Shown in pieces: positions 13,051 through 64,000 of a stretch of 64,000 nucleotides of DNA. Position 1 is the stretch's first letter. Each line of letters starts with the position of its first letter. Made by a program: the position numbers and the translations under genes. Under the pieces are notes generated by a model. The model had not been told where the DNA came from. It saw only the letters and a list, made by a program, of their open reading frames with translations, and ran no database searches. The stretch is taken from positions 186,001 through 250,000 of the IMG/VR virus record IMGVR_UViG_3300027759_000045, one strand, 5' to 3'.

Positions 13051-13075
13051 GATTTTTTCCTAGGTAAATATAGTT

Positions 13076-15445
13076 ATGGCAACTATGTACACCCCTGAAG
13101 AAAAAGCAGAAATCGAAGCGCGAGCGGCAGATGAAATAAAACGTCTTGGCGCTGTCAGCAATGAAACTAAAATGGCCATGATGGACATGTCTGTTGGTAT
13201 CAAAGGGTTCACTGCTAGTCTAACCAAAGGATTCGGGCAACTGGGGTCTTCTGCGTTAGGTTTGACCAAGCAACTGGCCGGTGGCGAAACTGGCTTATCT
13301 GTATTCAATGATTCAATTGGTGGCGTAACAAATATGTTAGGCGATCTAGCAGGGTTAATTCCTTATGTGGGCGGCGCACTTAAAACAATGATCAAAGGCG
13401 CAGGCGAGTATACACAGGCAGTAAACAAGCAAGCAGATTTACTGAACAAAAATTATCAAGAAATGTCCAAACTTGGTGCCACAGCATCCGACGGCGTTCA
13501 AGGGGTTTATGACAATCTAAAACGCATGAACTACGGCACCGACGAACTGGACAAGTTTGTGAGTATTGTTAGAGAAAACTCAACAACGTTGGCGCATTTT
13601 AGTGGCACAGTCAGTCAAGGACTTGGAGAAATGGCTGCAGTGTCGCAGTCCTTAAAAACCAGCGGCATGAGCCGAGAGTTTGAACTCATGGGCATAAGTG
13701 TTGATGAAATGAACAAAGGCATTGCTGGTTTTTCAAAGATGCAAGCGTTGACAGGATCACGACAAAAACTATCCTCAGAACAGCAGGCCGAGGCAGCTGC
13801 CAAATATATTAAAGAAACAGACTTACTGGCAAAAATGACTGGCCAGAGTAGAGAAAAACAACAGGCGCTGGAAGAAAGCGCCATGGCAGAAGAACGCTTT
13901 GCCGGCTACAAGTCAGAATTGGCAGAACGAGCTAAACTAGGCGATGAAGCGGCGGCAGAACAACTGAAGCAGGTTGAAAGATCACAGAAAATGCTGGCAG
14001 ATGCTTCGCCCGAAACACGCAAAGGGTTCTTAAACATTCTGTCGGGCACAATGGATACTCCTGAAGCACAGAAGTTATTGTTAACTATGCCAGAGGCAGC
14101 AGCAGTAGCAGGTAAAAAGATGTTCGATGCCGGTGAATTGCAGGACGCAATGTTACGGGATCTAACAGCTGGCCAAAAGAATGCTCAACAAATGGCACAA
14201 ATGGGCATCAACGATTCGAGCTATATCAAGTATACCGAGCAAATGAAGTTAAAGGCGCAGTTTGAATCCGGTACACTGGCAGAACGCGAAGCACAGGCTC
14301 TTAAAGAACAAACAATCACAGATCAAAATACCAAAGATATAGTTGATACCAACATTAAAAACCGTGCATCACGCGACAGTTTGCAAGATTTACTCAATGC
14401 CGGGATTGGTCCAGTTTCTACTGCCATGAAGGGAGCAGCATCTGCTACCGAAAGTGTTATCACGGGCTTTGAAAAATTAGCGGCATCTATGGGCGTTCCG
14501 ACTAAAAAACGCGATGCGGCACCAGCGGCAGGTGGAGCAGGAGGTGGAGCCTCTGCGGCAGCCCCAGCGGCAGCTAAGCCAGCGGCAGGTGGAGCAGGAG
14601 GTGGAGCCTCTGCGGCAGCCCCAGCGGCAGCTAAGCCAGCGGCAGGTGGAGCAGGAGGTGGAGCAGGAGGTGGAGCCTCTGCGGCAGCCCCAGCGGCAGC
14701 TAAGCCAGCGGCAGCTAAGCCAGCGGCGGGTGGTGGAGCAGGAGGTGGAGCAGGAGGAGCCGGAGGAGCACCAGCAAAACCCAGCCCTCGACCACCAGAA
14801 GGATCCGGAGCATCAGAATCTGGCTCTGAAAAAGTTGATTTAACAAAAATATTAAAATTTACTGCTAGATCTGGCAGCCAACAAAGTTTTGAAGGACTAA
14901 CCGACACATTTAAAAATTCTGTTATCTCTGCCGCAACTGAGTATAGTAAATTAACCGGCGGTGTGTTGCAGATTAACAGTGCTAAACGAGATCCAGCAGA
15001 CCAGCAAAGAATCTGGGATGAATCAGTAGCAGCCGGCAGAACGGGTGTAACTGCCAGTGGTATGCCTATAGGCAAACCAGGCCGTAGTCTACACGAAAAA
15101 GGCGAAGCAGTTGATATTCAAAATTACAACGATCCAATAGCTGTGACAGCCATGAACAAATATGGATTGACACAAAAAGTGCCCAAAGATCCTGTGCATT
15201 TCCAGGCTGCAGACGGCGGCATAGTTCCTCCGTTGCCAGGGGGAGCAAATGTACTGGCAGGTGAAGCCGGCCAGTCCGAAGCAGTGGTTCCATTGCCGGA
15301 TGGCAAGACAATACCTGTGCAAATGGTGGGCAATGAAGAACAAATGAGCATGATGTCTGCACAGCTGGATAGACTAGACCAAATGGTACGCATAATGCAA
15401 ACTCAAGTGGGTGTGTCAGAGCAATTATTGAAGTATGCACAGTGA
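13076..15445 (+). CDS. Tape-measure/baseplate-hub-like protein with C-terminal M15 (VanY-like) peptidoglycan peptidase
   Basis: ~480 aa Ala/Gln/Glu/Met-rich helical region, Ala/Gly/Pro linker, then INSAKR...Q..IW...SLHEKGEAVDI...DPVHF, then GEAG.SEAVVPL. Confidence 0.7.
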   Translation: MATMYTPEEKAEIEARAADEIKRLGAVSNETKMAMMDMSVGIKGFTASLTKGFGQLGSSALGLTKQLAGGETGLSVFNDSIGGVTNMLGDLAGLIPYVGGALKTMIKGAGEYTQAVNKQADLLNKNYQEMSKLGATASDGVQGVYDNLKRMNYGTDELDKFVSIVRENSTTLAHFSGTVSQGLGEMAAVSQSLKTSGMSREFELMGISVDEMNKGIAGFSKMQALTGSRQKLSSEQQAEAAAKYIKETDLLAKMTGQSREKQQALEESAMAEERFAGYKSELAERAKLGDEAAAEQLKQVERSQKMLADASPETRKGFLNILSGTMDTPEAQKLLLTMPEAAAVAGKKMFDAGELQDAMLRDLTAGQKNAQQMAQMGINDSSYIKYTEQMKLKAQFESGTLAEREAQALKEQTITDQNTKDIVDTNIKNRASRDSLQDLLNAGIGPVSTAMKGAASATESVITGFEKLAASMGVPTKKRDAAPAAGGAGGGASAAAPAAAKPAAGGAGGGASAAAPAAAKPAAGGAGGGAGGGASAAAPAAAKPAAAKPAAGGGAGGGAGGAGGAPAKPSPRPPEGSGASESGSEKVDLTKILKFTARSGSQQSFEGLTDTFKNSVISAATEYSKLTGGVLQINSAKRDPADQQRIWDESVAAGRTGVTASGMPIGKPGRSLHEKGEAVDIQNYNDPIAVTAMNKYGLTQKVPKDPVHFQAADGGIVPPLPGGANVLAGEAGQSEAVVPLPDGKTIPVQMVGNEEQMSMMSAQLDRLDQMVRIMQTQVGVSEQLLKYAQ
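14522..14760 (+). repeat. 57-bp tandem repeat (PAAGGAGGGASAAAPAAAK), ~3 copies plus partial units
   Basis: Identical units at 14522-14578 and 14579-14635; third unit has an internal 12-bp duplication, followed by 15-bp sub-repeats. Confidence 0.92.
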
Positions 15446-15483
15446 TCACGGTAAATATTACAGTATGCAAAAGGAAAATGTAA

Positions 15484-17292
15484 ATGGCTGAAACAGAAAA
15501 TGGTCGTAAGCGCGGTTGGCTCAAGTATTTCAAAGTGGCCGCAGGTGACGCCAACGGCCAACTGAGTCCTATTTCTGGGCGTTATCAAGCAGGCATACCC
15601 GGCTACGATCGCCAAACCGGCTACACTGGCAACACCGGAACCGGAAATGATTTTGCATTTCGTAACTATGCCAGCAGACTGCCTGAAGTGTACTCGGGCC
15701 ATCCCAATCGTGTTGAACGTTACAATCAGTATGAAAACATGGATCTTGATTCGGAAATCAATGCATGTCTAGATATCATTGCAGAGTTCAGCACACAGAA
15801 CAACGAAGACAACAACACACCGTTTGATATCACATTCAAAGACACTCCCACTGATCACGAAGTGGAAATTATTAAAAAACAACTGCAACAGTGGACCAAA
15901 CTGAACAAGCTGGACCAGCGCATGTTCAAACTGTTCCGCAACACCATCAAGTACGGTGACCAGGTGTTTGTGCGTGATCCAGAAACATTTGAAATGTACT
16001 GGGTTGACATGGTCAAGGTCAGCAGAGTCATTGTGAATGAATCAGAAGGCAAGCGTCCTGAACAGTACATCATCCGTGACATCAATCCCAACTTTCAAAA
16101 CCTAAGCATTGCACAAAAGACCACCAGCGACTACTATGTGAGTAGATCAACAGGTAGTACAGGACAAACAAACTATTCCAACAGCAACGGCGGCGCCGGA
16201 GGTGGCGGAGGTGGCACAGTGGGCAACAGCAGATTTGCACAGGCCATGAACGAAACTTGTATTGATGCCAAGCACGTGGTGCACATGAGTTTGAATGAAG
16301 GATTGGATTACTTTTGGCCATTTGGACAAAGTATCTTGGAGAACATCTTTAAAGTTTACAAGCAAAAAGAACTGCTGGAAGACTCTGTGCTGATCTATCG
16401 TGTGAGTCGTGCTCCAGAGCGTAGAGTGTTTAAAATTGATGTGGGTAATATGCCCAGCCACATGGCCATGGCCTTTGTGGAACGTGTTAAAAACGAAATG
16501 CACCAGCGCAGAATTCCCACAGTGAATGGTGGCGGACAAAATCTAATGGATGCCAGTTACAATCCACTCAGCATCAACGAAGATTACTTTTTCCCACAAA
16601 CAGCCGACGGACGTGGTTCCAGTGTAGACACCCTACCAGGCGGCACAGGACTGGGCGAAATTGATGATTTGAAGTATTTCAACAACAAAATGGCCCGTGG
16701 TCTGCGTGTGCCTAGTAGTTACTTGCCCACTGGTCCTGACGACTCAGACCGTGCAATGAACGACGGAAAAGTAGGCACAGCACTGATACAAGAGTACAGA
16801 TTCAATCAATATTGTGAACGTTTACAGCGTTTAATAATGCAGAAACTGGATGACGAATTCAAGATGTTCATGAAATGGCGTGGTTTTAACATTGACAACA
16901 GCATTTTTGATATTGTACTAGGCCCACCACAGAACTTTGCCAGTTACCGTCAAGCAGAAATGGACACCAGCAGAGTTGGTACATTCAGTACACTGGAGCA
17001 GTTGCCCTATATGAGCAAACGTTTCTTAATGGAACGTTACCTAGGGCTGAGTCAAGAAGAGATTGTGGAGAACGAAAAACTCTGGCGTGAAGAACGCGAT
17101 CAGCCTGAGTTAAGCACCACACAAGGACAAGATCTGCGTAGTATTGGTATTACTCCAGCAGGTATGGAAGCAGATATCAACACCGGTGAAGAACTGGCAG
17201 CTATGCCGCCTGCAGGTAGTCCTGATGTTCCTGGTGCCCCAGCTGGTCCTGGAACAGCACCCACAGCCGCTCCTCCGCCAGCGGCAGCATAA
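15484..17292 (+). CDS. gp20: Portal protein
   Basis: LEDSVLIYRVSRAPERRVFKIDVGNMP, EDYFFP..GRGSSVDTLPGG..LGEIDDLKYF..K..RGLRVP. Confidence 0.96.
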   Translation: MAETENGRKRGWLKYFKVAAGDANGQLSPISGRYQAGIPGYDRQTGYTGNTGTGNDFAFRNYASRLPEVYSGHPNRVERYNQYENMDLDSEINACLDIIAEFSTQNNEDNNTPFDITFKDTPTDHEVEIIKKQLQQWTKLNKLDQRMFKLFRNTIKYGDQVFVRDPETFEMYWVDMVKVSRVIVNESEGKRPEQYIIRDINPNFQNLSIAQKTTSDYYVSRSTGSTGQTNYSNSNGGAGGGGGGTVGNSRFAQAMNETCIDAKHVVHMSLNEGLDYFWPFGQSILENIFKVYKQKELLEDSVLIYRVSRAPERRVFKIDVGNMPSHMAMAFVERVKNEMHQRRIPTVNGGGQNLMDASYNPLSINEDYFFPQTADGRGSSVDTLPGGTGLGEIDDLKYFNNKMARGLRVPSSYLPTGPDDSDRAMNDGKVGTALIQEYRFNQYCERLQRLIMQKLDDEFKMFMKWRGFNIDNSIFDIVLGPPQNFASYRQAEMDTSRVGTFSTLEQLPYMSKRFLMERYLGLSQEEIVENEKLWREERDQPELSTTQGQDLRSIGITPAGMEADINTGEELAAMPPAGSPDVPGAPAGPGTAPTAAPPPAAA

Positions 17293-17300
17293 ATACTTGT

Positions 17301-17522
17301 ATGATTTTAAACGAACTTTACCAGCGTGAACCCGAAGGCTATCAAGATGTCGCACAGGACAACAGCCAGCCTCAAAAGAATCAACTGCGTAAAACTCGTT
17401 TGACACTACGACAGTTGAGCAAGCTACGTCAGATGAACGATGTACGAACTTACGAATACAAAGAGAAACTCAAAGATATTCGCAAACAGTATGCTCCCCC
17501 GGCCGCCCCTCCTGGCCTTTGA
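17301..17522 (+). CDS. Small head-module hypothetical protein
   Basis: 73 aa, between portal and core genes; basic RKTRLTLRQLSKLR; preceded by TAAATA. Confidence 0.7.
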   Translation: MILNELYQREPEGYQDVAQDNSQPQKNQLRKTRLTLRQLSKLRQMNDVRTYEYKEKLKDIRKQYAPPAAPPGL

Positions 17523-17630
17523 CCATGTCATAAATTAGTCAAAACTACCAGTTTTGACGTCTAAATATGCTCAGTTTACTGCTTTTGTGTAAGTAGTAAA
17601 CATGAGCCATAACCTTTTGGAGGAAACAAT

Positions 17631-18398: not shown

Positions 18399-18404
18399 GC
18401 GATT

Positions 18405-19052: not shown

Positions 19053-19054
19053 GC

Positions 19055-21457: not shown

Positions 21458-21482
21458 GGAGTTGACAAACATAAATAATCAT

Positions 21483-22235
21483 ATGAACAAATATAAACAA
21501 TGGTACAACAATATTACAGAACGAGCCAAACATCGTGTTCTGGATTCTTACACAGAAAGTCATCATATAGTACCACGCAGTTTAGGAGGCAGTAACAACC
21601 TAGATAATTTGGTCAATCTCACAGCCAGAGAACACTTTGTCTGTCATTGGTTGTTGGTTAAAATGACCACAGGACAAGACCATTACAAAATGCTAAATGC
21701 ACTTAGAATGATGCGAGCAGAAAAGCAAGGACAGAGTAGATATAATACAAAAATTACCGCACGAGTGTATGAAAGCATTAAACAAGAGTATGCAGAATTA
21801 CAAAGCAAACAATTTACCGGAACAGGAAATGGAATGTTTGGCAAACATCATACACAAGAAGCCAAAGATAAAATACGCCAAAAAAATCTAGGAAAAAAAT
21901 TAACTCCAGAACAGATTGAAAAACTTAAAAAAGCAACAACTGGCAAGAAGAAACCACCTATAACAGATGAGCATAGGGCAAAGCTATCAGTTGCACAATC
22001 AGGAAAAAATAATCCACGATATGGTGTAGAAGTATCTGCTGAAACTCGAGCAAAAATATCAGAGAAAGCAAAAGGTCGTAAGCAGTCAGTGGAAACAGTA
22101 CAAAAGAAAGCCAATGCTATACGTGGATTAAAACGTGAAAAAAAGCTGTGTCCGCACTGTGATCAACTGGTAGCAGTGAATGGCCACGCTCGCTGGCACG
22201 GCGATCACTGTGGCCAACTAAATACTAGATCTTAA
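21483..22235 (+). CDS. Free-standing HNH homing endonuclease with NUMOD3 repeats
   Basis: ESHHIVPRSLGGSN...NLVNLTAREHFVCHWLL; NUMOD3-like GKHHTQEAKDKI, TDEHRAKLS, SAETRAKISE; C-terminal CPHC...H..C. Start reassigned to MNKY at 21483. Confidence 0.9.
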   Translation: MNKYKQWYNNITERAKHRVLDSYTESHHIVPRSLGGSNNLDNLVNLTAREHFVCHWLLVKMTTGQDHYKMLNALRMMRAEKQGQSRYNTKITARVYESIKQEYAELQSKQFTGTGNGMFGKHHTQEAKDKIRQKNLGKKLTPEQIEKLKKATTGKKKPPITDEHRAKLSVAQSGKNNPRYGVEVSAETRAKISEKAKGRKQSVETVQKKANAIRGLKREKKLCPHCDQLVAVNGHARWHGDHCGQLNTRS

Positions 22236-23883: not shown

Positions 23884-25033
23884 ACAATCGCAAGTGTAGT
23901 TTGATTCGTTCAACAACACTGGCCCAGTCGCCCATTTGGGGTTGACGGAACAGTCTTGCAGTGGCATACCAAGGCGTGTCGTCTCTGTTCAGCAACCAAC
24001 GCCAGCAAGGTGCATAGTTGTTCAGCATGATCCAAGTGGGCTTGCCCAATGCCGCACTTAAATGGGCTGTGGCAGTGTCAACACTGACCACCACATCAAG
24101 ATTTGCAACCAGAGCGGCAGTGTCTGCAAAGGTGTTTACCCCACCAGGGAAACAGCGTACTCCCACTGACACTAGTTCTTTTTCTTCTTCAGCAGTACAG
24201 TCAGTTTGTAAATTATACCATTCGTAATCTGCGTGTGATCGAATCATGGCCAACATGGTCTCAAACGGCATGGCCTTGTGCTGATTGATCCAACTGTCAC
24301 GTCGCCCTGACCAGGCAAAGCCCACTCGTAATTTATTTTTAATTCCCAAGTTTCTGCGCCAGTCTACAACCAATGCAGGATCAGGATTTAAGTATTGAAT
24401 CACAGTGGGCAAGTTGTCAACCCGAACGTTTAATTTGCCAGGCAAGCTCATTATAGGAAGCCAGTAATCAAATACATCACCTGGCGGTTCGGCATAACTG
24501 ATCACTCGAACTCCACGTCCAATTTCACTAGATTGAATCAAAGGGATTAGGCTGTCTGTGACCTGCACTGTCACAGTGGCACCAATGTTTTTTAAGTTCT
24601 GTATAAATCGCACAAACTGTATAATGTCACCGTGTCCCTGTTCTCCGCGGATAAAAATTGTTTTACCCGTTAAATCTTCGCCATTCCACACAGGCCATGT
24701 ATAGTTGGGAATTGTACCTTTCAAATGTTCAAAATTGTGTCGTGCTTCGTATGCAGGCCAGCCACGCACATAGTCTCCACTCAGCAAGTAGGCCACTGCT
24801 AAATTAAAATGGTGTGTGACATTGGCCGGATCCAACTGTATGGCACGTTGTAAAAACGGAACAGCGCCTACTGGATCGCCTATCTCTCTCAACACATTGC
24901 CGTAGTTGTTGAACGCACCGGATGATCCTCTGTCCGTGGCCATTGCTACAGCGTACTGTTGCAGGGCCTGTTCTGGCAGGTGTTGTTCTCTGTAGGTATT
25001 GCCCTGAGCAATAAGTTGTTCTGTGTTTTGCAT
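23873..25033 (-). CDS. TPR-repeat glycosyltransferase (GT-B, GT9-like C-terminus)
   Basis: TPRs (AFNNYGNVL, HFNLAVAYL), EQGHGDIIQFVRF, DTAALVANLDVVVSVDTATAHLSAALGKPTW, CWRW..W Y. Confidence 0.88.
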   Translation of the reverse strand: MQNTEQLIAQGNTYREQHLPEQALQQYAVAMATDRGSSGAFNNYGNVLREIGDPVGAVPFLQRAIQLDPANVTHHFNLAVAYLLSGDYVRGWPAYEARHNFEHLKGTIPNYTWPVWNGEDLTGKTIFIRGEQGHGDIIQFVRFIQNLKNIGATVTVQVTDSLIPLIQSSEIGRGVRVISYAEPPGDVFDYWLPIMSLPGKLNVRVDNLPTVIQYLNPDPALVVDWRRNLGIKNKLRVGFAWSGRRDSWINQHKAMPFETMLAMIRSHADYEWYNLQTDCTAEEEKELVSVGVRCFPGGVNTFADTAALVANLDVVVSVDTATAHLSAALGKPTWIMLNNYAPCWRWLLNRDDTPWYATARLFRQPQMGDWASVVERIKLHLRLFKI

Positions 25034-25081
25034 GGCAATATTTACATGTTATTTTGGTACTGTAAAAATATCAATCACTCA

Positions 25082-27991: not shown

Positions 27992-28030
27992 GTGTTGCAT
28001 CAACTAAATACCCTATAAGGGAAAAAATCA

Positions 28031-39299: not shown

Positions 39300-39329
39300 G
39301 ACTAAATATCATATAACAATGGAACTACA

Positions 39330-40874: not shown

Positions 40875-40894
40875 ATACATAATAGGAACATATA

Positions 40895-46093: not shown

Positions 46094-46163
46094 ACGTTAT
46101 TTATGGTGGCTGAACTATCCCAATCTGCAACACTGTGTTCTAAAAACAACACTTTAGAAAAGA

Positions 46164-47653: not shown

Positions 47654-47660
47654 GTAATGG

Positions 47661-48683
47661 ATGCGATATCCTACACGTTTTCCAGACGAGCACCCAGATG
47701 ATCCAAGAATATACATTCCAAACATTGAGTTTTACATAACCAATGTTTGCAATTTAACTTGTCCACAATGCAATAGATTCAATGACTACGACTTCAAAGG
47801 TTGGCAACGCTGGAGTGACTATGAATCTCAGTACACTGAATGGGCCACAAAAGTCCGACTGCAACGAGTAACCATATTAGGTGGTGAGCCACTGTTAAAT
47901 CCAACCATATGCGACTGGATCATTGGACTCAATCGCTTGTGGGGTAAAAAAGTAAATGTACTAACCAACGGAACTCGCCTGAACCATGTGCCTGGCCTGT
48001 ACGAAGCACTGTTAAACTACCGAGAAGAAGATGGTAACTGGATAGGTGTCAGTGTGCATAACATCAATGATTTACCACAGTACTTTGAAGAGATACGCAA
48101 GTTTCTCAGAGGCGACATAACATATTATGAAGGCAAAGAGGCACTCAAGTCCGATGGCACCAGAGCAACCTGGGGTGCAGACTATGCGTTTGTTGACAGC
48201 AACGGTGTGCATGTACATGTTTGGGTGTATACCGAGTTTAGTAAATCAGCCATAGTGACCAATGATCAAGGACAGCTCACACTGCATCAAAGTGACCCCA
48301 TTGTGGCACACGAAAACTGTGGTTTTCAAAAGTTTCAAAGTTATCATTTTATCTGGGCCAAGTTATACAAATGTGGTCCTGCCGGACTGTTGCCAGAATT
48401 TGATAAGCAATATCCTCTTGATCTGTCCGAGCACGACCGTTTCTTGCTGAGTGGATTACGCAGATACAAACCACTTACAATTGAGGAGTTTGACACCCGG
48501 GGTCAACAATTCATTGATAGAATTGATGATCCCGTTGAACAGTGCAAGTTTTGTCCAGAAAATGTAGATGCATATACCATAGTGTCGTTTAACAAAGCAA
48601 AGAATTCAACTAGTACATTTAACATTAAAGCAGATTCGATTAAGACCATAAATATAAACAACGGAGTTTATGATGGCAATTGA
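47661..48683 (+). CDS. Radical SAM protein
   Basis: TNVCNLTCPQC, ILGGEPLLNP, LTNG; C-terminal C..LYKC...CKFCP. Confidence 0.88.
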   Translation: MRYPTRFPDEHPDDPRIYIPNIEFYITNVCNLTCPQCNRFNDYDFKGWQRWSDYESQYTEWATKVRLQRVTILGGEPLLNPTICDWIIGLNRLWGKKVNVLTNGTRLNHVPGLYEALLNYREEDGNWIGVSVHNINDLPQYFEEIRKFLRGDITYYEGKEALKSDGTRATWGADYAFVDSNGVHVHVWVYTEFSKSAIVTNDQGQLTLHQSDPIVAHENCGFQKFQSYHFIWAKLYKCGPAGLLPEFDKQYPLDLSEHDRFLLSGLRRYKPLTIEEFDTRGQQFIDRIDDPVEQCKFCPENVDAYTIVSFNKAKNSTSTFNIKADSIKTININNGVYDGN

Positions 48684-49451: not shown

Positions 49452-49480
49452 TTGCGCATTACACTGTTGTGTGTTATAAT
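49452..49480 (+). promoter_or_regulatory. Sigma70-like promoter, leaderless arrangement
   Basis: TTGCGC, 17 nt, TATAAT; ATG 5 nt downstream at 49486. Confidence 0.6.
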
Positions 49481-49485
49481 AACAC

Positions 49486-50010
49486 ATGGCAGATTTAATG
49501 ATTGACTTAGAAGGGTTGGGCACTGGCCCCGACACTACAATACTAACTATTGCGGCCCAGAGTTTTGACCCGTTTGGCACAGGTCATCACGACAAGTCTT
49601 ACTATACTAGAGTAACACTGGAAAGCCAAGAAACTCGTAGCATCCAACAAGGCACAATTGACTGGTGGGCAACTCAACCTACTGTGGTTCGGGATGAAGC
49701 ATTTAATGAACAAGATCGAATCCCGTTGGACCAAGCACTGGATGAGTTAGGTAAACTGATTTGGCATTCTAATCGTGTCTGGGCGCAAGGACCCACGTAT
49801 GACATGAACATCCTGGAGCATGCCTACAAGAGCTATAACAAACCCTTGCCTTGGCAGTACTACATGGTACGGGATAGCCGAACTGTGTTTTCGTTATGGC
49901 CTGGCCAGCCTATTCCGCCTACTAGTCACCATGCATTAGAAGACTGCCGTAGACAAATTGGTATGTTACAACGCACACTAAAGCATCTTAATGTTACAGA
50001 GTTGAAATGA
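49486..50010 (+). CDS. DEDDh 3'-5' exonuclease (DexA/Rv2179c-like)
   Basis: MIDLEGL, WW..Q, WAQGPTYD..ILE, RDSRT, HHALED. Confidence 0.85.
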   Translation: MADLMIDLEGLGTGPDTTILTIAAQSFDPFGTGHHDKSYYTRVTLESQETRSIQQGTIDWWATQPTVVRDEAFNEQDRIPLDQALDELGKLIWHSNRVWAQGPTYDMNILEHAYKSYNKPLPWQYYMVRDSRTVFSLWPGQPIPPTSHHALEDCRRQIGMLQRTLKHLNVTELK

Positions 50011-51376: not shown

Positions 51377-51674
51377 TCTCAACTGTGCAGTTTAAACACA
51401 CTGTTTTCAAATTGTTAACACCAGTATTGTGTAAGTTGCCATCCACGTGATACACTGACGTTTGTGCAGAGTACTTGGATTTAAAGCCACATCTATCACA
51501 TGTGGCTTTTTTCTTATAGCCGGCGGATTTCCAACGAGGTTCAGGCGGCTTCGCTCGACGTTGTTTTTTGATACAGTGATCACAGCGTGTTCTATAGTGC
51601 GGAACACCATCACAATAGTAGTTAACAGCACACAATCTCTGTTGGTTACAAGCAGTGCATGAAGGTCTTTGCAT
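51324..51674 (-). CDS. Zinc-finger/HNH-like small protein
   Basis: Start MQRPSCTAC at 51674 (TAAATA 4 nt upstream); CxxC x4; VYHVDGN..N....NL.TVCLNC. Confidence 0.75.
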   Translation of the reverse strand: MQRPSCTACNQQRLCAVNYYCDGVPHYRTRCDHCIKKQRRAKPPEPRWKSAGYKKKATCDRCGFKSKYSAQTSVYHVDGNLHNTGVNNLKTVCLNCTVEIKKSDLPWRPGDLVPDL

Positions 51675-51769
51675 GGAGTATTTAGTGGGAAAACCTTTGC
51701 AAAGGGTGTAATGATTGCGTTTTTTCTGCATAGGTGCTAAATATTAAAACTTAGAAAAAGGATTTAACC

Positions 51770-54700
51770 ATGGCATTAGTATCCCCAGGCGTAGAAGTAA
51801 CGATTATTGACGAAAGTCAATATATCCCTGCAGCTACCAATTCAGTACCATACATTTTAATAGCAACGGCACAGAACAAAGTCAGTGCCGCTGGAGTTGG
51901 CGTTGCACCGGGAACATTGGCAGTAAATGCTAACCGTGTTTATTTAATGACCAGTCAGCGAGATTTGGCCGCTACTTTTGGCAATCCATTCTTCTACAAG
52001 ACCACTGCTGGCACACCAATCAACGGTTACGAACTAAACGAATACGGCCTGTTGGCAGCATACTCTGCACTGGGTGTAAGTAATCGTGCGTATGTGCAAC
52101 GTGTTGACATTGACCTGACAGAACTAACAGCGTCGCTATCACGACCGCTAGGTGCTCCAACTAACAATACCTACTGGTTAGACACTGCAAACACTGAATG
52201 GGGTATTTTCCAATGGAATATCACAACCGGTGTGTTCACTGTTCAAACTCCGATTGTGATCACCAGTACATTACAGTTAGAAACTGGCACAACAGTTCCA
52301 TTACAAACAGTTGGCAGCATTGGTGATTACGCTGTCACTGCAACCAGCACATTTAATCCAGGCTACTACAAACGTGGTGGACCAACATCTGCACAGACCA
52401 GTGCTACTGAACTGTCAGATTTGTACAACACTTGGGTAATAATTGGCAGCGACGAATGGAAAACTGCTTGGCCCACAGTGAGCGGTACATTAGCGCCAAC
52501 CACCTTGACAGCTGGTCAAACTTTTTCTGTCAATGATGTAACAATCACAGTTCCTGCATCACCCAACAACACAGTGGATGGTATTTCTACTGCTATCAAT
52601 ACTGCAGCCATCACTGGTGTTTTTGCAGCCAACATTGGCGGCAAACTGTACATCTATGCTGATTCCACTGCCACAAACGATGGCAGCACAGCTGACACTG
52701 GTGTTGTTTCAATAGCCAACATATCTGGCACTGCGCTGACAACATTGGGTATCACAGCAGACGAGTATTTTGCTCCTACCTATCAGGTAAGTCCAAGTTA
52801 TACAGTTCCACGTTGGGGCTCAACTCAAACACAACCAGCACCAACTGGCAGTGTATGGCAAAAGATTTCTGATGTAAATCAAGGTACTCAGATAGTTGTT
52901 AAAAAATACAGTTCTATTCTTGGTGCATTTGTTGCACAAGCATGTCCAGTATATCTGACTGAAAATGAAGAGTTGTATGCAACTGATCCCAGCGGCGGCG
53001 GAAAAAATATTCCAGCTGGATCTACGTATGCTCATGCAAACATATTAAAAGATAACACATCAAGTTTTACAATATTTGAAAGATATGCCACTGGTGCAAC
53101 AGAAATCACAGGTGATGACACTACCCCTGGACCGTTTGTTTCGGGCAACTCATTTACAATTCTGGCTACTCAACCTGGCACCCTTACGGTTGCTACTGCA
53201 ACAGCCACATTAGAAGGAACCACAGTTGAGGACTTTATTGCCGCAGTCAGTGCTGCCAATGTTCCATATGTTAGTGCCACTGTTAACAGTGCAGGCGCTG
53301 TGGTGTTTACACACTCCGCTGGCGGATCGACAGTATTGACCAATATAACTGGTACACCAGTCACCACAGCTGGATTTAATACCAGCGTAACTGGAGTAAG
53401 AAACAACTATGTCGATGGTGTAGCCACCGGCTTGGGACTAAGTAACTGGGTTACCACACCAACATTTACCTACACTGCAAGCGCAGCCGCACCGGATCAA
53501 GATCCAGCAGACGGTCGTTTATGGTACTACAGTGCAGTTGATGACGTTGACATCTTGATTCAAGACAACGGCGAATGGCAAGGTTATCAGAATGTAACAA
53601 ACGACATCCGTGGTTACGATTTGAGCAACACAAACGCTGCCGGACCAATTATCAGTGCCACTGCGCCTACCACACAAACCAACACAGCAGAATCACCATT
53701 GGTGTACGGTGACTTATGGGTGGACACAAGTGATTTGGAAAACTATCCCAAACTATATCGCTGGCAGCCAGTGAATGGTGTCGATCAATGGGTGGCCATC
53801 GACAACACTGATCAAACCACAGAAAATGGTGTGTTGTTTGCTGATGCACGTTGGGCACCAAACGGTGACACAGATCCTATCACAGCACCGTTCCCAACTA
53901 TCACCAGTTTGTTGGTCAGTGATTACCTGGACCTGGATGCACCAAATCCATCACTGTATCCACAAGGCATGTTGTTGTTCAACTCACGCCGTTCAGGATT
54001 TAATGTCAAGAGTTTCCAGGTTGACTACTTTAACGCAGACACCTATCCAGATGATACACTGCCCGCAGTGACCAATGCTTGGGTAACAGCCAGTGGTCTA
54101 AAAGCCAATGGTTCTCCGTACATGGGACGTCAAGCACAACGTGCTATGATTGTGGCTGCATTGAAGTCGGGTATTGATGTAAACACAGACGTGCGTGAAG
54201 AACAGCGTCAATTCAACTTGATGGCAACTCCGGCCTATCCAGAATTGATGCCAAACATGATTGCACTCAACAACGAGCGCAACAACACAGGCTTTGTGAT
54301 TGGTGACACACCACTACGTTTGGATCCACAAGATATCTTGTTGTGGGCCAGTAACAACAACGGTCTAGGACTAGACACAGGTGACGGTCTAACAGTGGGC
54401 AATCAGTACATGGGTGTATTCTATCCAAGTTGCCAAACAACTGACCTGAGTGGCAGCCCAGTAGTAACAGCACCAAGTCACATGATGATACGTACAATTA
54501 TTCGCAGTGACGAAGTATCATTTCCTTGGTTTGCTCCAGCCGGAACACGTCGTGGTGTGATTGACAACGCTGTACAGCTTGGCTATGTCAACTCTACCAC
54601 AGGTGAATTCCAACCGCTAGGAGTACGTCAAGGCCTGCGTGATGTGCTGTATGAAAATGCAATCAACCCAATTACGTTTATTCCTGGCATTGGTATAACT

Positions 54701-55090: not shown

Positions 55091-55136
55091 AGTCACGCAT
55101 AGATAACATAAATAACAGTAACAGAGGATAAAAATT

Positions 55137-55781
55137 ATGGCTTCAGCATCGTTAAACAAAATGACAGTACCCTTGGCAAGTGACGCTAGCCAAGGCAGTA
55201 CAGGCATATTAATGCCAAAACTCAAATACCGCTTTCGAGTGATATTTGAAAATTTTGGTGTGCAAGGTGGTCCAGTTACCGAAATGACCAAACAGGTCAT
55301 TGACTTTACACGTCCAACAGTGACATTTGAAAATATTGATTTACCAATTTACAACTCCACTCTTAAAATGGCTGGCAAGCACTCATGGGGCGACGTAAGT
55401 TGTAACTTGCGTGACGATGCCGGCGCTAATGTACAACAACTGGTTGGATCCCAACTACAGAAACAACTGGACTTCTTTGAAATGGCATCTGCGGCCGCAG
55501 GTGCAGATTACAAGTTCACAACCAAGTTTGAAGTACTGGACGGTGGCAACGGTGCTGTTGCTCCAACAGTGTTAGAGTCATGGGAACTGTATGGCTGCTA
55601 CTTGAAAGAAGTAAACTATGGTGATGCCAACTACGCAACCAGTGAAGCAATGACCATTGCACTGAGCATCACATACGACAATGCTAACCAAGTGGTTGGC
55701 GGCGGTGTTGGCGAAACAGGCACTATCCTTGGTACTACGTTAGGCACAGTAACCGGCTTAGGTGGCACCCAAGGCGCCTAA
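55137..55781 (+). CDS. gp19: Tail tube protein
   Basis: PKLKYRFRV.F, RP..TF, AGKHSW, W.LYGC....V.YG...Y, I.YDNA; follows the sheath gene. Confidence 0.88.
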   Translation: MASASLNKMTVPLASDASQGSTGILMPKLKYRFRVIFENFGVQGGPVTEMTKQVIDFTRPTVTFENIDLPIYNSTLKMAGKHSWGDVSCNLRDDAGANVQQLVGSQLQKQLDFFEMASAAAGADYKFTTKFEVLDGGNGAVAPTVLESWELYGCYLKEVNYGDANYATSEAMTIALSITYDNANQVVGGGVGETGTILGTTLGTVTGLGGTQGA

Positions 55782-57716: not shown

Positions 57717-57749
57717 GCCTCACTATGCCGCAAAAGCGGTAAATATGGT

Positions 57750-58253
57750 ATGACTAAAAAATTAGAAGACCTCTTCGACTTACCGTCTAGCACCGCCGAC
57801 ACAGACGAAACTGTGCCGGATATTGCCACCACACAATATGCCATAACTGAAATTGACAATGCCATTGACAAGATTGATGCTGCCTTACCCGGTGTGCGCG
57901 ATCTAGAAGCCAGTGATGGTGACATGGACGAACTAGCACAAAAAGCCACAGAAACATTTGATGATCTAATGGACCTTGGCATGCAAATCGACAGTCGTTA
58001 TGCCAGTGAAATCTTTGCAGTGGCAGGTGCCATGCTGGGCCATGCACTCACTGCCAAAACAGCCAAGATGAACAAGAAACTCAAAATGATTCAGTTGCAG
58101 TTACAAAAAGCCAAACTGGATCTTGACCGAGAAAAACGCACAGATGACGACTATCAAGAATCTACAGAAACTGCCGAAGGTCAAGTGCTGAGTCGCAATG
58201 ATTTGTTGGATCGACTTATTGGCACAAGAGACCAAAAGAATAAACAAGCATAA
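57750..58253 (+). CDS. Putative terminase small subunit-like helical protein
   Basis: Helical, acidic N-terminus, C-terminal SRNDLL; position after gp4. Assignment is tentative. Confidence 0.4.
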   Translation: MTKKLEDLFDLPSSTADTDETVPDIATTQYAITEIDNAIDKIDAALPGVRDLEASDGDMDELAQKATETFDDLMDLGMQIDSRYASEIFAVAGAMLGHALTAKTAKMNKKLKMIQLQLQKAKLDLDREKRTDDDYQESTETAEGQVLSRNDLLDRLIGTRDQKNKQA

Positions 58254-61025: not shown

Positions 61026-61027
61026 AC

Positions 61028-62061: not shown

Positions 62062-62072
62062 TAAATATCTAC

Positions 62073-62888
62073 ATGAAACAACTATTATTTGCGCTGTTGA
62101 TCGCAGCCACTAACTTATCATATGCGTGGGAACAAAGAGCCCCACTGCCGCCACAGGCCTGCGTGGCACACAGCCCATATGGATTTGCACAAACGCAACG
62201 TCCAGCACAGCCAATTTGCCGCGAAGCATACCTGGTAGGATACGACGCTACTGTTAAGATTCCTGCGTATGTTGCATACACATTACTACCACAAAACGCA
62301 ATAGGTTGCTGGCCACGTACAAATGCTTTTGTAGCAGACAGAAGTATTGTTGGTGGCGCCAAGCCAGATGACTATGCTGGCACAGGCTATGACAAAGGAC
62401 ATGCGGCACCAGATGGTGATTTAAGTTGGAGTGAGATTGTGGAATACGAAAGTTTTTTAATGACAAACATGTATCCTCAACACGGCTCTTTAAATCGGGG
62501 AATATGGAAGTTATTAGAGACGTCCATCAGAGGATGGGCAGTACAGCGAAACCAGGCTTTTACCATATACGTTGGCGCATTTTATGGCGCTGGTGATGAG
62601 TTTATCGGTAACGGTGTTATTGTACCGCACGGCTATTATAAAATTGTAATCAATGATGCCACTGGTGAAATTGCCGGATGGGCATTTCCGCACACTAAAC
62701 CTTATGTTAACTTAGGCAACGATCTAACTAAATTCCGTATGATGATTTCCAGCATTGAAAGCCGAGCAGGCGTTAAGTTTAGTTACCCACCTAAAGCACG
62801 TGAAGTAAGTCCAGGCGCAGAATGGCCTGTTGATTACGGTGCATTAACTAATGCTAAACGTGCCCGCTGCGGCAAGAACGCAGAATAA
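62073..62888 (+). CDS. DNA/RNA non-specific endonuclease (NucA/EndA family) with signal peptide
   Basis: YDKGHAAP, ESFLMTNMYPQ...LNRG.W..LE, VP..YYKI; N-terminal MKQLLFALLIAATNLSYA. Confidence 0.9.
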   Translation: MKQLLFALLIAATNLSYAWEQRAPLPPQACVAHSPYGFAQTQRPAQPICREAYLVGYDATVKIPAYVAYTLLPQNAIGCWPRTNAFVADRSIVGGAKPDDYAGTGYDKGHAAPDGDLSWSEIVEYESFLMTNMYPQHGSLNRGIWKLLETSIRGWAVQRNQAFTIYVGAFYGAGDEFIGNGVIVPHGYYKIVINDATGEIAGWAFPHTKPYVNLGNDLTKFRMMISSIESRAGVKFSYPPKAREVSPGAEWPVDYGALTNAKRARCGKNAE

Positions 62889-62920
62889 TCTATCTCTAGC
62901 CGTGGACATGTAAATACTGC

Positions 62921-64000
62921 ATGTCCAATTTCTACTGTGCCGCACCCTGGCGTGGCCTACATATAAACCCACGTGGTGATGTTAAAACCTGTTGTGCAGG
63001 TAATCCCAACATGCTGGGAAACTTAAACACTCAAAACATTGTTGAAATACTCAATAGTGATCTTATGTCTGAAATACGGTCAAGTTTGTCCCAGGGTATT
63101 CCTCATGAGTATTGTTCAAATTGTGTAAAAGCAGAACGCTTTGGTGCAGACTCTGAGCGGGCCTGGCACAACAATGTAAATCCTGGGTTTGATTATGCCA
63201 CTGCTGGCAGTGAATATCATTATCCTGTTATTGTAGATGTACGGTGGAATACAACATGTAATTTAAGTTGTAACTATTGCGGCGAAGCCTGCAGTTCAAA
63301 GTGGGCTGGCCTAAAAGGTATTCCAGTCAAGTCAGGCACAAGACCTTACTATGATGCAGTGTGTGATTTTATTGAACAACACTATGAACACATACACGAA
63401 GTGGCATTGGTTGGCGGCGAGCCACTGTTACTGCCAGAGAATAATCGACTGCTAGATGTAATACCAAAAGATGCAATTGTTACACTGATTACAAATCTCA
63501 GTGGCGAACTTGAAAACAACAAAATATTTCAAAAGTTAGCAACACGAAATCGAGTTGGCTGGAGCATGAGCTTTGACAACATTGGTGAAAGATTGGAATA
63601 TGTGCGTCACGGCGCCGAGTGGTCGCAGATCAAACACAATCTTGGGTTGATCAAAGGATTAATGACCGCACAGGGCCAGTGGGGAGGCATACATGCTGTG
63701 TACAACATCTACAATGCCACACGTATTTGTGAACTGCGACAGTTTGCAGAAGACACTGGAACTACAGTGCTGTGGCAGAACCTATTTCAGCCTGAATACC
63801 TAGATCCGTTCTTGCATGGTCCAGTAGTTGCGGCCGAAGCCATTGCCGAGATTGAACGTTTCTATGCAATGGGCATTGCTACCACTGCTGAAAAAATGTT
63901 CTTTGACAATGCACTAGACATGTATCACAAGGTCACACAAGCCCGCCCTGGAATTGAACAACAATTCCGTGATCATATTTTTCTAAACGAAACCAAGTAT
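62921..64000 (+). CDS. Radical SAM protein with N-terminal SPASM/twitch-like domain (runs off window end)
   Basis: Not in the track. Hand-translated MSNFYCAAPWRGLHINPRGDVKTCC...CSNC...DVRWNTTCNLSCNYC...SSKW...LVGGEPLL...ITNL...SFD...EYVRHG..W. Confidence 0.88.
   Translation, partial: MSNFYCAAPWRGLHINPRGDVKTCCAGNPNMLGNLNTQNIVEILNSDLMSEIRSSLSQGIPHEYCSNCVKAERFGADSERAWHNNVNPGFDYATAGSEYHYPVIVDVRWNTTCNLSCNYCGEACSSKWAGLKGIPVKSGTRPYYDAVCDFIEQHYEHIHEVALVGGEPLLLPENNRLLDVIPKDAIVTLITNLSGELENNKIFQKLATRNRVGWSMSFDNIGERLEYVRHGAEWSQIKHNLGLIKGLMTAQGQWGGIHAVYNIYNATRICELRQFAEDTGTTVLWQNLFQPEYLDPFLHGPVVAAEAIAEIERFYAMGIATTAEKMFFDNALDMYHKVTQARPGIEQQFRDHIFLNETKY

What the first reader, a model, noticed from the sequence alone, without database searches (positions are those of the whole stretch)
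13065..62921. Window-wide leaderless late transcription: TAAATA box 4-5 nt before the ATG
Seen: TAAATA (once TAAGTA) is followed by exactly 4-5 nt and then the start codon, leaving no room for a Shine-Dalgarno. Sites: 13076 (gap 5), 17301 (5), 21483 (5), 25033 minus (5), 46093 minus (4), 47661 (TAAGTA, 4), 51674 minus (4), 57750 (4), 62073 (5), 62921 (4). A sigma70-type promoter has the same spacing at 49486. Other TAAATA boxes (e.g. 25082, 28005, 39303, 40872, 51738, 55109) sit further upstream, most ahead of an SD-like sequence. Established: T4 gp55 recognises TATAAATA as a -10-only promoter and starts a few nt downstream. Inference: this phage uses a shortened late box and makes two classes of late mRNA, leaderless and SD-led, possibly to tier expression. 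It also hints at a host that translates leaderless mRNA efficiently.
Basis: partly seen in the sequence, partly recalled or inferred. Interest (0 to 1): 0.65.

Follow-up and report, generated by a model that had tools for sequence, protein, structure and literature searches.

The report
Promoters fused to start codons
In this 347-kb freshwater jumbo phage and its uncultured relatives, a T4-like late-promoter box (TAAATA), and also ordinary TATAAT promoters, sit so close to the ATG of about one gene in nine that transcription should begin at the start codon, which predicts leaderless mRNAs; no transcript ends have been mapped.

Summary
All ten sites are as described.

- **Enrichment.** Genome-wide (346,856 bp), TAAATA-Nk-ATG peaks at k=4, 5 and 7 (12, 18, 12; background about 2.6). 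At k=4-5 there are 30 sites against 9.1 in Markov-3 simulations (maximum 17).
- **Unbiased test.** 4-7 nt before gene starts, only Shine-Dalgarno hexamers and TAAATA are enriched (30 observed, 0.43 expected).
- **Conservation.** Before the gene after portal, TAAATA is invariant in 70 distinct relatives while its flanks vary. Orthologues in two other full genomes mostly keep the arrangement.
- **Sigma factor.** A gp55-like late sigma lies at 2230-3222.
- **Geometry.** T4 geometry (TATAAATA at -13 to -6) puts +1 on the A of the ATG at k=5. An initiating-A signal at +5/+6 is also seen in the SD-led class.
- **Second promoter type.** Canonical TTGACC-N17-TATAAT promoters peak at N6-ATG, their own +1 spacing.
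- **Distribution.** T4, PA5oct, GAP32, XbC2 and Atu_ph07 show no such enrichment.

No transcript 5' ends could be obtained, because only contigs were available. Leaderless transcription is therefore inferred, not shown. This is a new variant of known kinds (T4-type late promoters; leaderless phage mRNAs as in phiYS40).

The parts
2230..3222 (+). gp55-like late sigma factor gene (330 aa). It is the presumed reader of the TAAATA box. About 155 aa are inserted relative to T4 gp55.
   Evidence: phrog_12791 'sigma factor for late transcription' at 5.5e-73 and phrog_234 at 8.9e-23. T4 gp55 matches at E 3e-6. PDB 7d7c chain F (gp55) aligns in two blocks, residues 21-51 and 207-274.
13065..13078 (+). 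TAAATA + TAGTT + ATG of a 789-aa protein with a weak VanY/endolysin-like domain. Only 25 nt separate it from the divergent gene start at 13050.
   Evidence: Spacing k=5 is kept in 10 of 21 distinct relatives despite 24-69% protein identity.
17290..17303 (+). TAAATA + CTTGT + ATG of a 73-aa gene placed like T4 gene 67 (position only). It is the first gene of the run that ends in the major head protein gene. The TAA of the box is the portal stop codon.
   Evidence: TAAATA is 100% conserved in 70 distinct upstream sequences, while flanking columns are 36-79% conserved. Spacings are 4/5/6/7 = 15/44/1/10. Synonymous variation starts right after the ATG.
21472..21485 (+). TAAATA + ATCAT + ATG of a homing endonuclease (250 aa).
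   Evidence: phrog_655 at 2e-53. All five distinct homologues, at 38-84% identity and in different loci, carry TAAATA-N5-ATGAACAAATA.
25031..25044 (-). TAAATA + TTGCC + ATG of an isolated minus-strand 386-aa gene.
   Evidence: All 13 distinct relatives have k=4 or 5.
46091..46103 (-). TAAATA + ACGT + ATG of a 434-aa virion structural protein, which heads a minus-strand unit.
   Evidence: phrog_11591 at 5e-82. The orthologues keep the box at k=7 (G001) and k=5 (G002).
47651..47663 (+). TAAGTA variant + ATGG + ATG of a radical-SAM protein (340 aa). This is the weakest site. Its TAA is the stop codon of the upstream gene.
   Evidence: TAAGTA replaces TAAATA at two orthologous sites in G001 but is only weakly enriched overall. 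No orthologue was available to test this site.
51672..51684 (-). TAAATA + CTCC + ATG of an HNH endonuclease (116 aa from this ATG).
   Evidence: Orthologues in G001 (k=5) and G002 (k=4) start at this ATG, not at the upstream ATG at 51731. phrog_2255 match is weak.
57740..57752 (+). TAAATA + TGGT + ATG of a 167-aa protein of unknown function.
   Evidence: Orthologues have k=4 (G001) and k=5 (G002).
62062..62075 (+). TAAATA + TCTAC + ATG of a nuclease (271 aa).
   Evidence: phrog_14168 at 9e-33. The G002 orthologue has k=4.
62911..62923 (+). TAAATA + CTGC + ATG of a 378-aa gene that runs past the window end.
   Evidence: The G002 orthologue has TAAATA at k=5 and the G001 orthologue has TAAGTA at k=4.
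49472..49488 (+). Extended -10 sigma70-type promoter, TGTTATAAT + AACAC + ATG, of an exonuclease (174 aa).
   Evidence: Orthologues have TATAAT-N6-ATG (G001) and TGTTATACT-N6-ATG (G002).
15452..15486 (+). SD-led late promoter of the portal gene: TAAATA, 26 nt containing AAGGAA, then ATG.
   Evidence: In 22 of 31 distinct relatives the portal instead has TAAATA-N7-ATG.
51738..51772 (+). SD-led late promoter of the tail sheath gene (k=26, AAGGA).
55109..55139 (+). SD-led late promoter of the tail tube gene (k=22, GAGGA).
28005..28033 (+). SD-led late promoter of a 1243-aa PKD-domain virion protein (k=20).
39303..39332 (+). SD-led late promoter (k=21) of a 514-aa head-decoration or fibre-like protein. 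It follows a hairpin plus T-run.
40872..40897 (+). SD-led late promoter (k=17, AGGAA) of a 468-aa protein.

Best explanation
**What it is.** TAAATA is the -10-only late promoter read by host RNA polymerase carrying the phage's gp55-like sigma (gene at window 2230-3222). Transcription starts at an A five or six nucleotides after the box.

**Two classes of late gene.**
- In roughly half of the gene-proximal boxes, an SD-containing leader of about 13-22 nt follows. These include the major virion proteins.
- In the other half, the start codon itself occupies the start position (spacing 4 or 5) or lies 1-3 nt after it (spacing 6 or 7, usually ACY-ATG). The mRNA then begins at or next to its AUG and has no ribosome-binding site.

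The same architecture is used with host-type TTGACC-N17-TATAAT promoters, where the ATG sits 6 nt after TATAAT. About 40-48 of roughly 379 genes (11-13%) are of this kind.

**How it would work (inferred).** Established work on leaderless mRNA shows that translation of such messages depends on a 5'-terminal AUG. An AUG without an SD inside a longer read-through transcript should therefore be largely silent. Each such gene would be expressed only when its own promoter fires. That is a very compact, promoter-gated expression unit of 13-14 bp. It suits minor virion proteins, enzymes, isolated opposite-strand genes and mobile homing-endonuclease cassettes.

**Shown versus inferred.**
- Shown: the motif, its spacing statistics, its conservation, and the presence of a gp55 homologue.
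- Inferred: the promoter function of TAAATA, the exact transcription start, and leaderless translation.
For: 1. **Spacing peak.** It stands far above Markov and permutation controls. It is restricted to ATG.
2. **Unbiased enrichment.** TAAATA is the only non-SD hexamer enriched 4-7 nt before gene starts, about 70-fold, in three genomes.
3. **Conservation.**
   - At the 73-aa gene, TAAATA is 100% conserved in 70 distinct relatives while flanks and spacer vary. Spacings are 4, 5 or 7.
   - By my reading, roughly 19 of 22 G001 orthologues with an aligned start keep a box at k=4-7.
   - Orthologues switch among 4, 5 and 7, or to the SD-led form.
4. **Same box in SD-led genes.** It lies 17-26 nt upstream of the SD-led portal, sheath, tube and other virion genes.
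5. **Sigma factor.** A gp55 homologue is present.
6. **T4 geometry.** TATAAATA lies at -13 to -6 (PMC1524935). TAAATA + 5 nt therefore puts +1 on the A of the ATG.
7. **Independent start-site signal**.
   - SD-led boxes have A at +5 and at +6 in 54% of cases, against about 29% at control boxes.
   - The k=5 class has a pyrimidine at -1 in 31 of 31 sites.
   - The k=7 class has A at +5 in 14 of 17 sites.
8. **Second promoter type.** Unmistakable bipartite sigma70-type promoters (48 in the genome) are also bimodal. They have a sharp class at TATAAT-N6-ATG, their own canonical +1 spacing, one nucleotide longer than for TAAATA. Orthologues conserve this.
9. **Genes that need their own promoter.** Genes heading a strand run carry the abutting box in 14 of 50 cases, against 25 of 329 for other genes (Fisher p = 1e-4). 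The gene at 13076 has only 25 nt of intergenic space.
10. **Avoidance elsewhere.** TAAATA is rarer than its one-mismatch neighbours: 538 against 594-894 over three genomes. This fits avoidance of spurious promoters.
Against: - **No 5' ends.** No transcript 5' end was observed. The lake metatranscriptomes that hold this phage are available only as contigs, which cannot show starts.
- **T4 partners missing.** No gp45-type clamp was detected. gp33 was not searched here; the CBB authors report none for that relative. The T4 geometry is therefore borrowed from a distantly related system.
- **Same place as an SD.** The box occupies the position an SD would, so a translational role cannot be excluded by position alone.
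- **Coupling possible at three sites.** At 17301, 47661 and 62073 the ATG lies within 12 nt of the upstream stop codon. Termination-reinitiation could contribute there.
- **Unexplained spacing.** The dip at spacing 6 and the conserved ACY at spacing 7 are not explained.
- **Crude gene calls.** They come from a simple codon-usage caller of my own. The raw spacing histograms do not depend on it.
Confidence: 0.7

Rival explanations
1. TAAATA 4-7 nt before the ATG is a non-Shine-Dalgarno translation signal, for example an A/U-rich ribosome or S1 binding element. The mRNAs start further upstream and are not leaderless.
For: The box occupies the same distance window as the SD in other genes. A/U-rich enhancers of translation are established in Gram-negative bacteria (general knowledge).
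Against: - The identical hexamer lies 17-26 nt upstream of SD-led virion genes with the SD in between, where it cannot be the ribosome site.
- All six positions are invariant in 70 relatives. That is stricter than an A/U-rich enhancer would need.
- Bipartite -35/-10 promoters show the same start-abutting class at their own +1 spacing.
- The pyrimidine at -1 and A at +1 pattern is a transcription-initiation feature.
- A gp55 homologue is present.
- Divergent genes such as 13076 have only 25 nt in which to fit a promoter and leader.
Confidence: 0.1
2. The promoters are real, but the abutting ATGs are not the true starts. Translation would begin at a downstream SD-led codon, so the mRNAs have ordinary leaders.
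For: Start codons were assigned by a crude caller. Some ORFs have alternative starts, for example at 21426, 21483, 51731 and 51674.
Against: - tblastn alignments to relatives begin at residue 1 at these ATGs.
- Conservation with synonymous third-position variation begins immediately after the ATG, for example ATG-ATy-yTn-AAy at the 73-aa gene.
- The peak is specific to ATG and to in-frame first ATGs of long ORFs.
Confidence: 0.05
3. For same-strand neighbours, the ATG is reached by termination-reinitiation from the upstream gene. TAAATA would be conserved partly because it supplies the TAA stop codon.
For: At 17301 and 47661 the TAA of the box is the upstream stop codon. At 62073 the stop lies 12 nt upstream.
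Against: - In many relatives the portal stop lies well upstream, yet TAAATA is still present at k=4-7.
- The ATA half is equally invariant.
- Many sites head divergent or isolated units with no upstream same-strand gene, such as 13076, 25033(-), 46093(-) and 51674(-).
Confidence: 0.05
4. The pattern is a chance product of A+T-rich intergenic sequence.
For: TAAATA is A+T-only, and intergenic DNA is A+T-richer than coding DNA.
Against: - Markov-3 simulations never reach the observed count.
- Fourteen same-composition permutations lack the peak.
- Reversed-pattern controls are about 3-fold lower in five related genomes.
- The orthologous sites are conserved.
Confidence: 0.01

Closest known systems
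Bacteriophage T4 late promoters (TATAAATA read by gp55, with gp33 and the gp45 clamp)
   Same: - Both are -10-only promoters with the same TAAATA core.
- A gp55 homologue is present.
- The box-to-start distance deduced here (+5/+6) matches T4's -13 to -6 placement.
- The box precedes virion genes.
   Different: - Only 6 bp are conserved (7 with a frequent preceding A).
- No gp45-type clamp was detected.
- The sigma carries an insertion of about 155 aa.
- T4 shows no enrichment of TAAATA-N4-7-ATG: 16 against 20 in the reversed control. Abutting the start codon is therefore not a T4 trait.
Proposed ATAAATA late promoter of the Rak2-like jumbo phages CBB and GAP32 (PMC5259590)
   Same: - They belong to the same broad phage group (portal about 50% identical).
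- The motif precedes structural genes.
- A gp55-like sigma is present, with no gp33 or gp45 reported.
   Different: - In GAP32, XbC2, PA5oct and Atu_ph07 the N4-7-ATG class is not enriched.
- In those phages the gene after portal either is SD-led, with the box about 40 nt upstream or no box, or (PA5oct) overlaps the portal stop codon with no box or evident SD.
Leaderless middle and late transcripts of Thermus phage phiYS40
   Same: It is a virulent phage that makes most middle and late mRNAs without a leader. Their translation is thought to be favoured by a shifted IF2/IF3 balance (review PMC3594737).
   Different: - The host phylum differs (Deinococcus-Thermus), where leaderless genes are common (PMC12340547).
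- The promoter type differs and there is no gp55.
- phiYS40 starts were mapped experimentally, whereas here they are inferred.
- No phage IF3, S21 or S1 homologue was found here.
Cellular leaderless genes with a -10 box adjacent to the ORF (Deinococcus-Thermus, Actinobacteria; lambda cI from PRM)
   Same: A -10 element a few bp upstream of an ATG, with no SD. The TATAAT-N6-ATG class here is exactly this architecture.
   Different: Here the architecture is combined with a phage-specific sigma and a phage-specific box. It coexists with strong AAGGAG SDs in most genes of the same genome.
T4 late-promoter-gated translation of gene e, soc and I-TevI (ribosome site sequestered in read-through transcripts)
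   Same: The outcome would be the same: the gene is translated only from transcripts that begin at its own late promoter. Homing endonucleases are among the clients (PMC3014915).
   Different: T4 achieves this with an RNA hairpin that the shorter late transcript lacks. Here the proposed gate is the 5'-terminal position of the AUG itself.

Membership tests
T4-type late transcription system | gp55-family sigma factor encoded by the phage | tested here: met
   Window 2230-3222 matches phrog_12791 at 5.5e-73 and phrog_234 at 8.9e-23. It matches T4 gp55 at E 3e-6 and PDB 7d7c chain F at E 2e-6 in two collinear blocks. There is no Pfam hit.
T4-type late transcription system | -10-only promoter with a TATAAATA-like box upstream of late (virion) genes | tested here: met
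   TAAATA precedes the portal, sheath, tube and other virion genes. It is about 70-fold enriched next to starts. No conserved upstream element was found. Promoter activity itself was not tested.
T4-type late transcription system | Box at -13 to -6, so that the start lies 6 nt after the box | tested here: inconclusive
   The A enrichment at +5/+6, the pyrimidine at -1 and the position of the ATG fit. No 5' ends could be obtained.
T4-type late transcription system | gp45 sliding clamp as activator | tested here: not met
   T4 gp45 found no match at E <= 10. Pfam PF02916 found no match. A very divergent clamp cannot be excluded.
T4-type late transcription system | gp33 co-activator | not tested
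   It was not searched here, because gp33 is small and poorly conserved. It is reported absent from the relative CBB (PMC5259590).
Leaderless mRNA genes | Transcription start at, or within a few nt of, the start codon | not testable with these tools
   Only assembled metatranscriptome contigs were available. The start is inferred from promoter geometry for two promoter types.
Leaderless mRNA genes | No Shine-Dalgarno sequence, with a promoter -10 box occupying its place | tested here: met
   There are 4-7 nt between box and ATG at 31 to 39 genes in G000, depending on criteria (31 for TAAATA at the first candidate start; 39 when TAAGTA and any of the first ATGs are allowed). TATAAT-N5-6-ATG occurs at 7 of 48 bipartite promoters.
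Leaderless mRNA genes | AUG as start codon (leaderless translation depends strongly on a 5'-terminal AUG) | tested here: met
   Over three genomes the peak at k=4-7 is 37/46/17/31 for ATG. There is none for GTG (8/7/3/1), TTG or CTG.
Rak2-like / PA5oct-like jumbo myoviruses | T4-like portal and head module; genome above 280 kb | tested here: met
   - Portal_T4 matches at 3.5e-102.
- The portal is about 50% identical to PA5oct, Atu_ph07, BF and GAP32.
- The major head protein matches phrog_138 at 5e-99.
- The genome is 346,856 bp with terminal repeats.
- No nucleotide-level match was found in the phage collection.

The most novel reading that the evidence does not exclude
A widespread, uncultured clade of freshwater and marine jumbo phages may use 'start-site-gated translation' as a general regulatory layer. 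Both host-type (TATAAT) and phage-sigma (TAAATA) promoters are fused to start codons, so that about 12% of genes are translatable only from transcripts that begin at their own AUG and are silent in read-through RNA. That would make a 13-bp promoter-plus-start cassette the smallest known self-contained phage expression unit, one that also travels with homing endonucleases. It would further imply that the still unknown host, or the infected cell, translates 5'-AUG mRNAs efficiently, possibly through a phage-induced shift in initiation as in phiYS40.
Probability: 0.35. Interest if true: 0.75.

Novelty: new variant of a known kind. Interest (0 to 1): 0.6.

Why it matters
**Gene calling.** If confirmed, gene finders that look for a Shine-Dalgarno sequence will mis-start roughly one gene in nine in this phage clade. 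Two examples in the window are 21426 versus 21483 and 51731 versus 51674.

**Reach of gp55-type promoters.** It would extend T4-type late promoters to leaderless messages, which the paper library searched here does not describe. The jumbo phages studied so far showed either long leaders (AR9) or no leaderless transcripts (phiKZ early phase).

**Compact timing control.** The design offers a very short way to tie translation to one promoter. That is useful for understanding the timing of toxic or low-copy phage proteins such as nucleases and homing endonucleases. It could also serve as a minimal expression part.

**A testable sigma-promoter pair.** The work yields a concrete pair, the gene at 2230-3222 and TAAATA, from an abundant lake phage group that has no cultured member.

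Tried and rejected
- **Nucleotide search for a known phage.** Megablast of 10.8 kb against the phage collection found no match. Only protein-level relatives exist.
- **Direct RNA evidence.**
  - 24 lake and freshwater metatranscriptome runs hold parts of the region. All are stored as assembled contigs.
  - Laying four of them showed exact-match pieces. The deepest coverage lay over the major head gene.
  - No table of molecule starts was produced, so nothing can be said about 5' ends.
- **Host identification through relatives of the major head protein in bacterial assemblies.** Hits fall in MAGs labelled Haliscomenobacter, Thiotrichaceae, Polynucleobacter, Legionellales, Neomarinimicrobiota and others.
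  - I read this as inconsistent binning of phage contigs.
  - A Bacteroidota host also fits poorly with the canonical TTGACC-N17-TATAAT promoters and strong AAGGAG sites.
  - Counting the pattern over those whole MAGs was uninformative.
- **Phage-encoded factors that could favour leaderless translation.** No S21, IF3 or S1 homologue was found. IF1 and IF2 were not searched.
- **gp45 clamp.** None was found.
- **Pfam on the sigma.** No family matched.
- **The idea that leaderless genes are simply the late genes.** Rejected, because sigma70-type promoters show the same class.
- **The idea that the trait is general to T4-like or Rak2-like phages.** Rejected.
- **A first Markov simulation script** timed out and was rewritten.

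Full report
**Setting.** The window is bases 186,001-250,000 of a 346,856-bp virus record with direct terminal repeats and 43.6% G+C.
- It encodes a T4-like portal (Pfam Portal_T4, 3.5e-102), a major head protein, a tail sheath and a tail tube.
- At nucleotide level it has no match in the phage collection.
- The nearest cultured phages, at about 50% portal identity, are the PA5oct, Atu_ph07, Serratia BF and GAP32 group of jumbo myoviruses.
- IMG/VR holds hundreds of uncultured relatives. The best 80 have 74-96% portal identity and include near-complete genomes of 337, 332 and 320 kb.
- Lake and freshwater metatranscriptomes contain exact-match contigs.

All ten sites are present with the stated spacing. 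The site at 49486 is TGTTATAAT-N5-ATG.
- The genome contains 204 TAAATA on both strands. The number followed by ATG after k nucleotides is 12, 18, 7 and 12 for k=4, 5, 6 and 7, against about 2.6 elsewhere. A second broad hump lies at k=17-26.
- In 100 third-order Markov genomes, k=4-5 averaged 9.1 (maximum 17) against 30 observed. None of the other same-composition hexamers shows the peak, except shifted readings of the same motif.
- The peak is confined to ATG.
- Without choosing a motif in advance, the only hexamers enriched 4-7 nt before gene-start ATGs are Shine-Dalgarno (SD) variants and TAAATA. TAAATA was seen 30 times against 0.43 expected. Two related genomes gave the same result.
- By a simple codon-usage gene call of my own, 31 genes have TAAATA at k=4-7 before their first or nearly first ATG.
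- About 33 genes have the box at k=12-32 with an AGGA/GGAG site in between.

**Comparative evidence.**
- Before the 73-aa gene that follows portal (window 17301), all six TAAATA columns are 100% conserved in 70 distinct upstream sequences. Neighbouring columns are 36-79% conserved, apart from a frequent A just before the box. Spacings are 4 (15), 5 (44), 6 (1) and 7 (10).
- Codons after that ATG vary synonymously (ATG-ATy-yTn-AAy), so coding starts at the ATG.
- The genes at 13076, 21483 and 25033(-) behave alike.
- I fetched two full related genomes, G001 and G002. Both show the same 4/5/7 spectrum.
- Most orthologues of the G000 genes keep a box at k=4-7, often with a different spacing. Twice the box is TAAGTA in place of TAAATA.
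- Orthologues can also switch class. The portal is SD-led (k=26) here but TAAATA-N7-ATG in 22 of 31 distinct relatives.
- Five related genomes have about three times more TAAATA-N4-7-ATG than the reversed-pattern control.
- T4, PA5oct, Atu_ph07, GAP32 and XbC2 have no excess. In the four cultured relatives the gene after portal has no box abutting its ATG. It is SD-led in GAP32, XbC2 and Atu_ph07 and overlaps the portal stop codon in PA5oct.
- The arrangement is therefore a trait of this uncultured clade.

**Why TAAATA is a promoter.**
- The window encodes a gp55 homologue at 2230-3222. It matches phrog_12791 at 5.5e-73 and phrog_234 at 8.9e-23, T4 gp55 at E 3e-6, and PDB 7d7c chain F in two collinear blocks with about 155 aa inserted.
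- The same box stands 17-26 nt upstream of SD-led virion genes.
- An ATAAATA motif was already proposed as the late promoter of the relatives CBB and GAP32. These have a gp55-like sigma but no recognisable gp33 or gp45 (PMC5259590).
- I likewise found no gp45-type clamp.
- TAAATA is rarer in these genomes than any one-mismatch neighbour tested, as expected if stray promoters are avoided.

**Why the mRNAs should be leaderless.**
- In T4 the box TATAAATA occupies -13 to -6 (PMC1524935). The sixth nucleotide after TAAATA is therefore +1. With five spacer nucleotides, that is the A of the ATG.
- The sequences carry an independent start-site signal:
  - In the SD-led class, A is found at +5 and at +6 after the box in 54% of sites, against about 29% at TAAATA copies unrelated to genes.
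  - In the k=5 class, the nucleotide before the ATG is a pyrimidine in 31 of 31 sites.
  - In the k=7 class, +5 is A in 14 of 17 sites and +6 is C in 11 of 17 (ACY-ATG).
- A start at +5 or +6 therefore gives a 0-nt leader at k=4-5 and a leader of 1-3 nt at k=6-7.

**A second, unambiguous promoter type does the same.**
- The genome has 48 bipartite TTGAC-N16-18-TATAAT-like promoters, many with a conserved spacer. Their distance to the next ORF-opening ATG is bimodal. It is 5-6 nt in 7 cases and about 19-31 nt, mostly 25-31, with AAGGAG in most others. G001 and G002 are alike.
- Over three genomes, TATAAT-N6-ATG occurs 33 times against about 12 at neighbouring spacings.
- Six nucleotides after TATAAT is the canonical sigma70 +1. 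This is one nucleotide more than for TAAATA, matching the one-nucleotide difference in where the two boxes sit.
- This is hard to reconcile with a purely translational role for the boxes. It also shows that the design is not restricted to late genes.

**Which genes.**
- SD-led late genes in the window include the portal, sheath, tube and a PKD-domain virion protein. The major head gene is also SD-led but has no box of its own and lies in the run headed by 17301.
- The abutting class in the window includes the small gene after portal, a virion structural protein, a VanY-like 789-aa protein, two homing endonucleases, a nuclease and a radical-SAM protein.
- Elsewhere in the genome it includes a baseplate-wedge-like protein, other virion proteins, a kinase, nucleotidyltransferases, a phosphoesterase and many proteins of unknown function.
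- Genes that head a strand run, and so need their own promoter, carry the abutting box in 14 of 50 cases against 25 of 329 for other genes (p = 1e-4).
- The homing-endonuclease family keeps TAAATA-N5-ATG in all copies, even at 38% identity and in different loci. The box appears to travel with the cassette.

**Mechanism proposed.**
- Shown: the motif, spacing, conservation and sigma homologue.
- Inferred: TAAATA is read by the gp55-like sigma, initiation occurs at +5/+6, and translation starts from a 5'-terminal AUG.
- An AUG without an SD inside read-through RNA should be poorly used. The arrangement would then restrict translation to transcripts started at the gene's own promoter. T4 achieves the same outcome for gene e and I-TevI by hiding the ribosome site in a hairpin (PMC3014915).

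**Comparison with what is known.**
- Leaderless middle and late mRNAs are described for Thermus phage phiYS40, with a proposed IF2/IF3 shift (PMC3594737).
- A -10 box adjacent to ORFs is common in Deinococcus-Thermus (PMC12340547).
- AR9 transcripts have 26-491-nt leaders, and no leaderless transcripts were found in the early phase of phiKZ.
- No paper in the library combined 'leaderless' with gp55.
- I file this as a new variant of known kinds.

**Limits.**
- No 5' ends were available.
- The host is unknown.
- No phage S21, IF3 or S1 homologue was found.
- The TAAGTA site at 47661 is weak.
- Termination-reinitiation could contribute at 17301, 47661 and 62073.
- The dip at spacing 6 and the ACY of the spacing-7 class are unexplained.

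Noticed in passing
Whole genome G000, e.g. G000:C1:12006, 31945, 270429, 305065, 342099; in the window 2181-2208, 4075-4096 and 46170-46192: There is a family of 48 canonical sigma70-type promoters (TTGACC-N17-TATAAT, often with the spacer aattcccaatttgc). They are clustered in regions of small genes and are presumably early promoters. Their spacing to the ATG is bimodal: 6 nt, or about 30 nt with AAAAAGGAG.
   Followed up: yes
window 2181-3222: The gp55-like sigma gene has about 155 aa inserted relative to T4 gp55. It is preceded by TTGACA-N16-TATAAT whose -10 box overlaps a late box (TATAATAAATA). This suggests early or middle expression plus possible late self-reinforcement. The apparent start codon is GTG.
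   Followed up: partly
window 21483-22235 (+) and 51324-51674 (-): Two homing or HNH endonuclease genes are inserted in the head and tail modules. One lies right after the major head gene and one just before the sheath gene. Each has its own TAAATA-N4/5-ATG.
   Followed up: partly
window 5129-6706 and 47661-48683; G000:C1:281962-283035: The genome holds several radical-SAM genes (one with a SPASM domain). Two of them have start-abutting boxes. Their function is unknown.
   Followed up: no
window 13051-13075: Only 25 nt separate the divergent starts at 13050(-) and 13076(+). The promoter of the minus-strand gene must therefore lie inside the 789-aa gene's coding sequence.
   Followed up: no
window 15401-21400 (runs X1-X4): Lake-water metatranscriptome assemblies contain exact or near-exact contigs of this phage and its relatives. 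By far the deepest coverage lies over the major head gene (20174-21370). The clade is therefore present, and probably active, in lakes.
   Followed up: partly
L149, L150 (Haliscomenobacter MAG contigs of 148 and 183 kb); L157 (335-kb contig in a Neomarinimicrobiota MAG): Large contigs of related jumbo phages sit inside public bacterial MAGs of many unrelated phyla. This is probably a binning artefact and is worth flagging for those assemblies.
   Followed up: partly
window 39262-39308: A G+C-rich hairpin followed by a T-run (AGGACTTTTGCAGTCCTATTTTTTT) lies immediately before a TAAATA box. This is a terminator-then-late-promoter junction.
   Followed up: no
window 33243-33266: The 1861-aa ORF (33264-38849) has TAAATA 15 nt before a TTG, with no evident SD. 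Its true start is unclear.
   Followed up: no
G000:C1:37-46 and 346759-346768: The terminal repeat contains the palindrome TAAATATTTA, which reads as a late box on both strands.
   Followed up: no
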